From positions 10,602,001 to 10,666,000 of the forward strand of contig CM060731.1 of assembly GCA_030704615.1 (NCBI GenBank): 64,000 bases of DNA. The letters are read 5' to 3'. This document shows positions 4,401 through 7,400 of this stretch, piece after piece. This DNA comes from Takakia lepidozioides. Taxonomy: Eukaryota; Plantae; Bryophyta. The notes beneath the pieces are model-generated. The model saw only the letters and a program-made list of their open reading frames with translations, was not told the DNA's origin and did not search any database. The position numbers and the translations under genes are program-made. Positions within the stretch are counted from its first letter, which is position 1. Each line of letters begins with the position of its first letter.

Positions 4401-7400
4401 GTTTCATAATCAGCATCGTGTAAGTGAGAGAAGGGGGTATTGAAGTGGATACGAGGGTGTGAAGGGAGAGAAGCGGAGGAACCCCCCCTGACTGGGAGAG
4501 AGGTGGAGGGAAATACAAAGAAAAGGCAAGAATGATCAGAATCTGGGTACCTCGTGATGTAGAGAGAGCTAACTCTATCAATTGTGTTGGGGCTCCCCAA
4601 GAGATAGTCAACCACGCTCTGTCCTTTGTACGTGTGGCAGGTGAACTGGCTCGAGGACTTGAAAGTGGTCGTGCCATTGTAGATGAAAGACGAAGAAGTT
4701 CGGTACCTCCACAGGAGGCAGAGGGAAAGAGAGAGGTTAATTTATGGAATTCCTTGCAATCAATCCTCAGTAAGACTCAGACTATCTGTGTGGTTTAAGT
4801 GGTGTTTGCATGCAGACCAAACAATGAGCAGAGATCGTCTGTGGGAGGAGTACTTCTCAGATCCTTCGCAGTGGTGGGACAACAGGTTAAATAAGGTGAG
4901 GCTATCTCCATTTGGGCTTGTAATCAAAGCTGCATGATGATATTTTGTGCACTGGTCTCTTTGAGATACATGACAGTTCATCTTTTTCAGGAAGTAACCA
5001 AAGTTGTTCTGATGGTTGCTACCCGAAGGTTGTTCTTTGTTGTTAGCAGGGTGTGTAGGTTGCTCAAGGTTGTTTCTCTGTTGTCTGCAAGATGCATGTA
5101 GCGTTGGTGGTTGTAGCCTTCTTTATGCAAGCCTGTGACTGAGCCATGGCTCCTCAGCTGTCTACTGGTGGATTTGACAGAAGAGTCCAAGATCACCAGA
5201 CTTCAGACATAGGGGCACAAAGGAGGGTCTCTGGATTGACAGTTTGTCAAACCCTGCTTGGGTGAAAGCAGAACTAGAAGGTCAAGTACAATGTGGTGAA
5301 GTGCGGACGCTATGTGTTGCAGGACGATTCAAAGAGGCGGTGCACGTTTTGAACCAACAAGGCAGTCCAGCTGACTTCGAAACTTATGTCTGTCTATTGC
5401 AGGAGTGCATCAACATGAAAGGCCTTGCAGAGGGAAAACAGGTGCACGCCCACATTGTCCAAAGTGGATTCAATCCAAACATTTTTCTACTCAATGCCCT
5501 TGTCAACATGTATTCTAAGTGCGGGAGTGTGGTGGATGCACGTCGGGTGTTTGAAGATATGCCTGATCGAGATATATATACATGGAATATTATGATAGCA
5601 GGATATGCGAAGCATGGTTGTGGGAGGGAGGCATTGGAGATCTATGAGAAAATGGTACAGGAAGGGTTGAAGCCTGACAGGATCACTTTCCTTTCCATTG
5701 TCAAGGCGTGTGCGACACTGGCAGCTCTGGAAAAGGGCATCGAGGTCCATGCTGACATCGTCAATGCTGGAATGGTGCCAGATGTCATTCTAGAGACTGC
5801 TGTTGTTGACATGTATGCTAAATGTGGGAGCATGGAGGATGCACGTCAAGTGTTCAGCAACATGGCTCAACGAAATGTGGTCTCATGGAGTGTAATGATA
5901 GCAGGATGTGCCAAGCATGGTTATGGTAGGGAGGCTTTGGAGATCTACGAACGATTAGTATGGGAAGGCGTGACACCTGACAAGGTCACTTTCATCTCTG
6001 TTGTCAATGCGTGCGCCAACCTGGCAGCTCTGGACAAGGGCATGGAGGTTCATGCTGATATCAGAAAAGCTGAAATTGTGCCAGATGTCATTCTGGAGAC
6101 TGCCCTTGTTGACATGTATGCCAAATGCGGGAGCATAAAGGTTGCGCGGCAATTGTTTGAAGAAATGGATCAACGAAATGTGGTCTCATGGAACACAATG
6201 ATTGCAGGATATGCTCAGCATGGGTGCGGCAAGGAGGCTTTAAATATGTACAAGCAATTGCAACAGGAAGGGTTGACAGCCAACAAGGTCACGTTCATTT
6301 GTGTTCTCAATGCATGTGCAAGCCTAAGAGCCCTGGACAAGGGTGTAGAGATCCTTGCAGATATCCGCAAAGCTGGACTTGTACCAGATGTAAGTCTGGA
6401 GAATGCCCTTGTTAACATGTATGCCAAATGCAGGAGCATAAAGGATGCATATCAAATGTTTGACAGTATGGCTGAACGAGATGCAATCTCATGGAGCACT
6501 ATGATTGCTGCATTTGACCAGAATGGATGTGGTAGGGAGGCTTTGGAGATATATGAGCGAATGATGCAGGAAGGGGTGATGCCTGACAATGTCATTTTCG
6601 TTTGCGTTCTGAACACTTGTGCCAACCTAGGAAACCTGGAAAAGGGCATAGAGGTCCATGCTGACATTAGCAAAGCTGGAATTGCACCCTGTATAAATTT
6701 GGAGAATACCCTTCTCAATATGTATGCCAAGTGCGGGAGCCTTAAGGATGCTTGTCAAGTGTTCGACAGTATGGGTAAGCACGATGTTGTGTCATGGAAC
6801 ACAATGATTGCAGGATGTGTTCAGCACGGGTTTACGAGGAAGGCTTTTCATTTGTATGACCAAATGCTAAGGGAAGGGGTGACACCTGACGTGGTCACTT
6901 TCATTTGCGTTCTTCATGCATGTGCCCACCTGAAAGCCCTGGAGAAGGGCATGGAGGTCCATGCTGACATCATTCAAGCTGGTGTTGCACCATGTACAAA
7001 TTTGGACAATACCCTTGTCAGCATGTACGCCAAATGCGGGAGTGTAAACAAGGCACGTAAAGTGTTTGACAATATGGCTGAACGAGATGTGGTCTCATGG
7101 AATGGGATCATTGCAGGATATGCCCAGGATGGCTGTGGTAGGGAGGGTTTAGAGATGTATGAGCAAATGATAAGGGAAGGGGTGACGCCCAACAAGGTTA
7201 CCTTTGTTTGCGTCCTCAATGCCTGTGCCAGCCTGGCAACCCTGGAAAAGGGCAAAGAGGTCCATGCTGACATCATCACAGCCGGGGTTGCCCCAAACAT
7301 CATTCTGGAGACTGCCCTTGTGAATATGTATGCCAAATGCGGCAGCATAAAGGATGCGCGTCAATTGTTTGACAGTATGGCTGAACGGAATGTGGTCACT

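What the first reader, a model, noticed from the sequence alone, without database searches (positions are those of the whole stretch)
4816..5290. OSB-type PDF ssDNA-binding motif spliced onto a PLS-PPR RNA-editing-type factor
Seen: an 80-nt exon absent from the long ORF splices in frame (GT4896..AG5180) to give LWEEYFSDPSQWWDNRLNKKSPRSPDFRHRGTKEGLWIDSLSNPAWVKAEL just ahead of 23 clear L/S/P motifs. Established: W..FF..P..WWDNR..K.NP..PDFKHK.T..ALW is the PDF motif that confers ssDNA binding on plant organellar OSB proteins; PLS-PPR arrays read organellar RNA base by base. Inference: a chimeric, sequence-programmed factor (ancestrally transit peptide-PDF-PLS-E-DYW) that could tether a specific transcript to ssDNA at nucleoids or R-loops, couple editing to transcription, or act on ssDNA. 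I do not know of a characterised protein with this architecture.
Basis: partly seen in the sequence, partly recalled or inferred. Interest (0 to 1): 0.85.

Follow-up and report, generated by a model that had tools for sequence, protein, structure and literature searches.

The report
PDF-motif PPR gene, deaminase tail lost

Summary
Window 4833-4895 and 5181-5279 encode the two halves of one PDF motif. They join at a GT(4896)..AG(5180) phase-0 intron, in frame with an 868-codon PLS-PPR reading frame.

A profile built only from named angiosperm OSB proteins scores the halves at 27 and 43 bits on abutting profile positions (2-21 and 22-54). None of 2000 shuffles comes close.

The intron sits at the same codon boundary and phase in a Diphasiastrum PPR gene and in an orchid OSB gene.

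This is not a one-off chimera. With the OSB-only profile, 35 of the 120 best PPR relatives carry a PDF in front: lycophyte, moss and liverwort in full, ferns as second halves only. None of 35 gymnosperm hits does.

Searchable papers do not mention the combination. This scan has flagged the same family many times on other DNA of this genome.

This copy ends inside the E1 motif. Its E2/DYW deaminase is a relic full of stops, and a decayed LINE abuts its 5' side. No read joins this locus's own two exons.

The function of the module in PPR proteins is inferred, not shown. The likeliest reading is an auxiliary single-strand nucleic-acid grip.

The parts
4683..4815 (+). In-frame stretch upstream of the PDF exon. 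It is collinear with the decayed second half of an upstream PDF plus linker in Diphasiastrum relatives. A possible older acceptor lies at 4682/4683 and an ATG at 4683.
   Evidence: ORF list; alignment A2; tblastn with P0113 covering 4770-4895. No run contig was seen lying on 4668-4801, so its inclusion in the mRNA is open.
4816..4895 (+). It encodes the first half of the PDF motif, with homology running from 4833 to 4895.
   Evidence: OSB-only HMM: 27.1 bits, profile positions 2-21.
4896..5180 (+). Phase-0 intron of 285 nt, GT..AG with donor AAG|GTGAGG. It splits the PDF motif between profile positions 21 and 22.
   Evidence: The position and phase are the same in Diphasiastrum PPR gene L001 and orchid OSB gene L003. 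Spliced contigs of paralogues show joints at the same place.
5181..5279 (+). Second half of the PDF motif, at the start of the large exon.
   Evidence: OSB-only HMM: 43.3 bits, profile 22-54. tblastn E-values down to 3e-13.
5280..7694 (+). Short linker, one degenerate N-terminal PPR-like motif, then 23 PLS motifs: L1-S1, six P1-L1-S1 triplets, and P2-L2-S2.
   Evidence: Pfam PPR_2 at 4e-130 and PPR at 1e-115. The motif parse gives exact 35/35/31 lengths. By eye, code residues in the P and S motifs are canonical (ND, TN, SD, NN).
7695..7787 (+). E1 motif cut short after 29-30 residues of about 34 by the stop codon at 7785-7787.
7788..8235 (+). Relic of the E1 end, E2 and the DYW deaminase. It has at least 5 stops in every frame, deletions and a frame change. 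An HSEKL remnant is still visible.
   Evidence: tblastn with C-termini of five DYW relatives; stop counts. A 676-nt run contig with one mismatch lies on 7595-8269.
1977..4686 (-). Decayed non-LTR retrotransposon whose 5' end abuts the gene's 5' side.
   Evidence: Broken ORFs; RVT_1 at 4e-16. Two run contigs stop matching the window at 4686 (records 3 and 9).

Best explanation
This is a nuclear gene of the PLS class of pentatricopeptide-repeat proteins, in a lycophyte-like genome. It belongs to an old subfamily whose members carry one or more OSB-type PDF modules between the transit peptide and the PPR array. The PDF module is a compact mini-domain of about 55 residues (helix, short strands, helix). 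It is encoded in two halves separated by a phase-0 intron. That intron is shared with OSB genes, so the module moved between the two gene families as genomic DNA. In this copy the module and all 23 PLS motifs are intact, but the protein stops inside E1 and the E2/DYW deaminase is a dead relic. The product would therefore be PDF-PLS-E1. Such a protein can recognise a specific organellar RNA of about 23 nucleotides but cannot edit it by itself. Inferred steps: the PDF sits directly N-terminal of the array, so it would lie at the 5' side of the bound RNA. There it most likely acts as a sequence-unspecific grip on single-stranded nucleic acid that raises affinity. Editing, if any, would need a deaminase supplied in trans. 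Otherwise the protein acts as an RNA binder.
For: Identity of the motif: the OSB-only profile scores both halves on abutting positions. In the other direction, a profile built from PPR-borne motifs found 1188 cluster representatives. Most of the top hits carry several PDFs in their C-terminal part. Nine of the ten I scanned hit Pfam SSB, five above its cut-off. That profile also hit all 44 source-named OSB1/2/3 proteins.

Shared intron: same codon boundary and phase in the window, in L001 (PPR) and in L003 (OSB).

Fold: the AlphaFold model has pLDDT 93.9. It matches streptophyte SSB clusters and PPR/DYW clusters in the ESM Atlas at TM 0.87-0.91.

Family: 35 of 120 best PPR hits carry a PDF, from Diphasiastrum, Sphagnum, Calypogeia, Adiantum and Ceratopteris (the fern models carry only the second half). 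None of 35 Cryptomeria or Ginkgo hits does. PPR-borne PDFs fall on one side of a branch in a motif tree.

Selection on this copy: 868 sense codons are open and motif lengths are exact. 13 of 14 family-invariant PDF residues are kept on both sides of the intron. The adjacent tail has at least 5 stops per 150 codons in each frame.

Against: No contig joins this locus's own 4895 to 5181. The joints seen differ by two or more letters at the junction and come from paralogues. The two runs are only guessed to be RNA. No transit peptide or upstream exon is recognisable, and a LINE abuts the 5' side, so targeting and the promoter are unknown. Nucleic-acid binding by a PPR-borne PDF has never been measured. 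OSBs are reported to prefer ssDNA over RNA (PMC4166229). Moss PPR56 edits in E. coli without its N-terminus (PMC10482289), so an N-terminal module is not essential for catalysis there; whether PPR56 has a PDF was not tested.
Confidence: 0.65

Rival explanations
1. This copy is a dead or dying paralogue. Loss of the DYW domain and the LINE insertion at the 5' side ended its function, and the open frame is only a leftover.
For: The E2/DYW relic has many stops. A LINE reaches to 4686. No transit peptide or upstream exon was found. There is no junction contig from this locus itself. The genome holds many copies of the family.
Against: The tail has decayed to about one stop per 30 codons. The adjoining 868 codons have no stop and no indel in 23 motifs, and keep canonical code residues and 13 of 14 PDF invariants. 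Under equal neutral decay roughly 29 stops would be expected. Perfect or near-perfect run contigs lie on 6944-7085, 7475-7624 and 7595-8269.
Confidence: 0.25
2. One reading: the PDF anchors the RNA-programmed factor to single-stranded DNA at nucleoids, transcription bubbles or R-loops. Editing or RNA handling would then be co-transcriptional, or DYW-bearing relatives would act on ssDNA.
For: In OSBs the PDF is the ssDNA-binding part and prefers ssDNA to RNA (PMC6963530, PMC4166229, PMC6451138). Residues invariant in OSB PDFs are also invariant in PPR-borne PDFs (alignment A3).
Against: There is no experimental or genomic evidence here. The module lies only about 8 residues from the first PPR-like motif, which favours contact with the same RNA strand. 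This copy has no deaminase.
Confidence: 0.12
3. In PPR proteins the PDF module is not a nucleic-acid binder. It would be a protein-contact, oligomerisation or import/assembly module.
For: AtOSB2 forms tetramers (PMC6963530). The fold has no solved analogue that would settle its function. Seed plants, which use MORF-type helper proteins (my own knowledge, not tested here), showed no PDF among 35 gymnosperm PPR hits.
Against: Published OSB1 work assigns ssDNA binding to the PDF itself (as cited in PMC6963530). Conserved basic and aromatic residues (R, K, K, K, four W) are typical of single-strand binders; this is an inference.
Confidence: 0.12
4. Chance resemblance or a false splice model: the small exon is not part of the PPR gene.
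For: The junction was not seen in reads of this locus itself.
Against: The profile positions of the two halves abut exactly at a GT..AG pair, in frame. The intron position is the same in two other genes. Relatives break their alignment at exactly this point. The large exon has no ATG before its first L motif.
Confidence: 0.02

Closest known systems
[quoted passage not shown]
   Same: Both carry the same PDF module of about 55 residues. This copy is 26 of 55 identical to the angiosperm OSB consensus. It keeps the same invariant residues, has the same predicted fold, and has the same phase-0 intron inside the motif.
   Different: OSBs have an SSB/OB-like domain with the PDFs C-terminal to it. 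Here there is no SSB domain, and the PDF is N-terminal of a PPR array.
PLS-class PPR-DYW RNA-editing factors (for example Physcomitrium PPR56, PPR65)
   Same: P1-L1-S1 triplets, a terminal P2-L2-S2 triplet, the start of E1, and canonical code residues.
   Different: An extra N-terminal PDF module is present. The 2022 Physcomitrium PPR review does not list it among additional PPR domains (PMC9459714). This copy has no functional E2/DYW.
DYW-less E-type PPR proteins of flowering plants that depend on a deaminase supplied in trans (for example the E+ class with DYW2, PMC7076377; CWM1, cited in PMC10482289)
   Same: The protein is truncated after the PLS array or E motifs, with the site-recognition part kept.
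   Different: The truncation here lies inside E1, earlier than in E/E+ proteins. No trans partner is known in lycophytes, and those proteins carry no PDF.
PDF-PPR genes of Diphasiastrum complanatum, Sphagnum and Calypogeia (annotated only as hypothetical or PPR proteins)
   Same: The same architecture and intron. The array is about 50% identical to the best Diphasiastrum hits.
   Different: Many of those keep the transit peptide, one to three PDFs and an intact DYW. This copy keeps one PDF and no DYW.

Membership tests
PDF motif (as defined on OSB proteins) | A motif of about 50 residues with the W..FF..P..WWDNR / PDF.H / LW / NP.WV signature, scoring against a profile of OSB PDFs | tested here: met
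   OSB-only HMM: 27.1 bits (positions 2-21) plus 43.3 bits (positions 22-54); 0 of 2000 shuffles reach these scores. 13 of 14 invariant residues are kept.
PDF motif (as defined on OSB proteins) | Binds single-stranded DNA | not testable with these tools
   Known only for OSB1/OSB2 from papers (PMC6963530, PMC6451138).
OSB protein family | Central SSB/OB-fold-like domain (Pfam PF00436) N-terminal of the PDFs | tested here: not met
   The Pfam scan of both exon products finds only PPR-type families. Of the ten top profile hits I scanned, nine match SSB, five above Pfam's cut-off.
PLS-class PPR proteins | Tandem P1-L1-S1 triplets (35/35/31 residues) ending in P2-L2-S2 | tested here: met
   23 motifs with exact lengths. 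Pfam PPR_2 at 4e-130.
PPR-DYW RNA-editing factors | Intact E1, E2 and a DYW cytidine deaminase with the HxE and CxxCH zinc site | tested here: not met
   A stop lies inside E1 at 7785. The region homologous to E2/DYW has at least 5 stops, deletions and a frame change.
PPR-DYW RNA-editing factors | Organelle transit peptide | tested here: inconclusive
   No upstream exon with similarity to relatives' N-termini was found. Candidate starts at 4824 or 4683 give no obvious presequence. No targeting predictor was at hand.
PDF-PPR subfamily of seedless land plants (apparently unnamed) | PDF module(s) directly N-terminal of a PLS array, with a phase-0 intron between profile positions 21 and 22 | tested here: met

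The most novel reading that the evidence does not exclude
The PDF module makes the editing factors of seedless plants bind the displaced DNA strand or nascent-RNA/DNA junction at organellar nucleoids. Site recognition would then be co-transcriptional. The module would have been lost when seed plants adopted helper proteins. In DYW-bearing members it could even bring a cytidine deaminase to single-stranded DNA.
Probability: 0.12. Interest if true: 0.85.

Novelty: new variant of a known kind. Interest (0 to 1): 0.55.

Why it matters
PPR editing factors of mosses work as single polypeptides, and it is not known what replaces the helper proteins of flowering plants. A conserved nucleic-acid-binding module has gone unrecognised in front of the array in liverworts, mosses, lycophytes and ferns. 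One reason is that gene callers miss its small first exon: seven public models start in the middle of the motif. This module is a concrete candidate, and it can be tested with existing moss and E. coli editing assays. The intron shared with OSB genes also gives a clean case of module exchange between the DNA-maintenance and RNA-editing machineries of organelles. This particular locus adds a DYW-less member. It is not the best exemplar of the family.

Tried and rejected
- A word-index search with only the first 45 residues of the large exon found nothing. This is uninformative because of the index.
- Two gene look-ups (P0015, P0364) were not on record. P0277 and P0230 worked instead.
- The original OSB1 paper (PMC1785405) is not held.
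- Pfam has no PDF model.
- The PDB sequence search, Foldseek on PDB, the VIA wide search and BFVD gave no credible analogue of the PDF fold. The best results were E about 7 to WW domains and Z 2.7.
- Laying the two available runs gave mostly paralogue fragments and no junction of this locus itself. I rejected using depth as evidence.
- tblastn with the N-termini of 22 relatives found no further exon between 1 and 4683.
- I did not search or fold the joined two-exon model. Each exon was handled by reference on its own, and relatives' unbroken motifs were used for the profile and the fold.

Full report
**What is in the sequence**

On the + strand a short coding stretch ends at 4895 with ...AAT AAG, followed by GTGAGG. 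An AG at 5179-5180 is followed from 5181 by a frame that runs without a stop to 7785-7787.

The small exon carries an ATG at 4824 and encodes the first 21 residues of the motif (4833-4895). The large exon opens with the remaining 33 residues (5181-5279). The long ORF listed mechanically from 5244 has no ATG before its first L motif, so the small exon also supplies the only plausible start.

Pfam finds nothing in the two short peptides because it has no PDF model. It finds PPR families at E 1e-115 to 1e-130 in the large exon. A motif parse gives one degenerate N-terminal repeat and then L1-S1, six P1-L1-S1 triplets and P2-L2-S2. That is 23 motifs of exactly 35, 35 and 31 residues, followed by 29-30 residues of E1 and the stop.

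**Is it the OSB motif?**

I built a profile from 17 PDF-like stretches of PPR relatives (A1) and ran it over 1.84 billion cluster representatives. It found 1188 proteins at E ≤ 1e-3.
- Most of the top 148 carry several PDFs in their C-terminal part.
- Of ten I scanned, nine match the Pfam SSB domain, five of them above its cut-off.
- Eight of the 148 are PPR proteins.

A search from one of these proteins returned many proteins that their sources name OSB1, OSB2 or OSB3. All 44 named ones are hit by the PPR-derived profile.

I then built a profile from the named OSBs alone and scored the two window peptides separately.
- Exon 1 scores 27.1 bits on profile positions 2-21.
- Exon 2 scores 43.3 bits on positions 22-54.
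- The best of 2000 shuffles reached 12.4 and 7.1 bits.
- There is no other PDF anywhere in the 64 kb.

The copy keeps 13 of the 14 residues invariant in A1 (the exception is F to Y) and is 26/55 identical to the angiosperm OSB consensus.

**Shared intron**

In the window the intron lies between ...N-K and K-S-P..P-D-F, phase 0. In the Diphasiastrum PPR gene L001 (product P0277) the exon ends ...P-D-K|GT and the next exon starts AG|M-N-A-S-Y-P-D-F. In the orchid OSB gene L003 (product P0230) it is ...K-N-K|GT and AG|R-N-P-K-Y-P-D-F.

The codon boundary and phase are the same in all three. This argues that the module passed between OSB and PPR genes as genomic DNA, not by convergence or retro-copying.

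A tree of 48 motifs puts all 17 PPR-borne PDFs on one side of a branch, with weak support (74/46). That is compatible with a single fusion.

**Fold**

AlphaFold2 on an alignment of 48 OSB and PPR motifs gives a confident compact model (pLDDT 93.9). It has a helix at residues 2-11, short strands at 16-18 and 31-33, and a helix at 49-58.

No solved structure resembles it. In the ESM Atlas it superposes at TM 0.87-0.91 and about 1 Å on streptophyte SSB-family clusters and on three PPR/DYW clusters. This is independent support that both families carry the same mini-domain.

**How widespread**

The array is at best about 50-52% identical to proteins of the lycophyte Diphasiastrum complanatum. The window is therefore probably from a related lycophyte whose own annotation is not in the collection.

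With the OSB-only profile, 35 of the 120 best PPR hits have a PDF in front.
- 22 are from Diphasiastrum, some with two or three copies.
- Others are from Sphagnum fallax and the liverwort Calypogeia fissa.
- The ferns Adiantum and Ceratopteris contribute models that carry only the second half.
- Several are unnamed metagenome or transcriptome proteins.

None of the 35 Cryptomeria and Ginkgo hits has a PDF. Seven public models begin exactly in the second half of the motif. Gene callers therefore miss the small first-half exon, which helps explain why the architecture has gone unnoticed.

**Literature**

Only three relevant papers in the searchable library use the term PDF motif, and none mentions PPR.
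- No paper combines PDF motif with DYW.
- None combines OSB with DYW.
- The motif strings do not occur in any relevant paper.
- A 2026 survey of 182 OSB genes does not mention PPR.
- The 2022 review of Physcomitrium PPR proteins lists RRM, LAGLIDADG, SMR, NYN, CBS and SAP as extra domains, but not PDF.

The original OSB1 paper is not held, so I cannot exclude a remark there. Earlier notes of this scan flag the same combination 451 times in this genome, and their follow-ups reached the same reading. I reached mine before reading them and tested it independently.

**This copy in particular**

Downstream of the stop, the homologue of the E1 end, E2 and DYW is still recognisable against five relatives. 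It carries at least five stops in every frame over 150 codons, plus deletions and a frame change.

In contrast, the 868 codons upstream have no stop and no indel. By eye they keep canonical code pairs (ND, TN, SD, NN) in the P and S motifs. With the tail's stop density, about 29 stops would be expected there. I take this as evidence that the PDF-PLS part stayed under selection after the deaminase was lost.

The 5' side is less clear.
- The stretch 4683-4815 is in frame and collinear with the decayed second half of an upstream PDF plus linker in relatives. The exon may originally have been 213 nt, with an acceptor at 4682/4683.
- A decayed non-LTR retrotransposon on the other strand reaches to 4686.
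- No similarity to relatives' N-termini exists further upstream.
A tRNA-Thr gene lies at 973-1044.

**RNA**

Only two public runs hold parts of the stretch. Both are kept as contigs and both are only guessed to be RNA.

Laid on 4400-8400 they give thousands of short paralogue pieces. Joints at 4895>5184, 4888>5185 and 4886>5179 carry a few different letters at the junction. These are spliced forms of paralogues at the homologous place, not of this locus.

Perfect or near-perfect pieces of this locus lie on 6944-7085, 7475-7624 and 7595-8269, the last running through the stop into the relic. None was listed on the intron or on 4668-4801. This is compatible with transcription and splicing of this copy but does not show it.

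I did not search or fold the joined two-exon product. Each exon was used by reference on its own.

**Mechanism**

Shown:
- the architecture and homology of the module;
- the shared intron;
- conservation of the module's invariant basic and aromatic residues in both families (A3).

From papers: in OSBs the PDF, not the OB-like domain, binds ssDNA (PMC6963530, PMC6451138), with preference over dsDNA and RNA (PMC4166229).

Inferred: PPR arrays bind RNA with their N-terminus towards the 5' end of the target (general knowledge of PPR proteins). Here the PDF ends only about eight residues before the first PPR-like motif. The simplest reading is that it contacts the single strand just 5' of the footprint and adds unspecific affinity.

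Without a DYW domain this protein could only mark or protect its target, or recruit a deaminase in trans as DYW-less PPRs of flowering plants do (PMC7076377). Tethering to ssDNA at nucleoids remains possible but unsupported. Moss PPR56 edits in E. coli without its N-terminus (PMC10482289), so such a module is not needed for catalysis as such.

**Verdict**

The architecture is a new variant of a known kind. It appears undescribed and is of real interest at the family level. This locus is a DYW-less, LINE-flanked member whose expression is not proven.

Noticed in passing
   Followed up: partly
window 1977-4686 (-): A decayed non-LTR retrotransposon with a reverse-transcriptase domain and several frame breaks. 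Contigs of other copies stop matching at 4686, right beside the PPR gene's 5' side.
   Followed up: partly
window 9649-11778 (-): An intact, apparently intronless GRAS-family transcription-factor gene (Pfam GRAS at 7e-117).
   Followed up: partly
window 1424-1470: A compound (CT)n(CA)n microsatellite.
   Followed up: no
P0165 (Coptis chinensis, 1526 aa) and P0121 (Kingdonia uniflora, 1160 aa): The PDF profile also hits a model with three N-terminal PDFs in front of a kinesin motor, and a protein with 13 tandem PDFs. Either may be a merged or mis-called gene model.
   Followed up: partly
ESM Atlas clusters, rows 5-6: Two clusters of tailed-phage hypothetical proteins (about 190-200 aa) superpose on the PDF model at TM 0.66-0.73. 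BFVD did not confirm this. It is a weak lead on the module's origin.
   Followed up: partly
P0034, P0051, P0081, P0095, P0106, P0109, P0118: These public PPR gene models or fragments begin in the second half of the PDF motif, at the position of the conserved intron. The small first-half exon is routinely missed.
   Followed up: partly
P0085 and P0038 (Diphasiastrum): These annotated models start just after the PDF, so the true share of PDF-bearing PPR genes is higher than counted. P0038 also lacks a DYW domain, like the window's copy.
   Followed up: no
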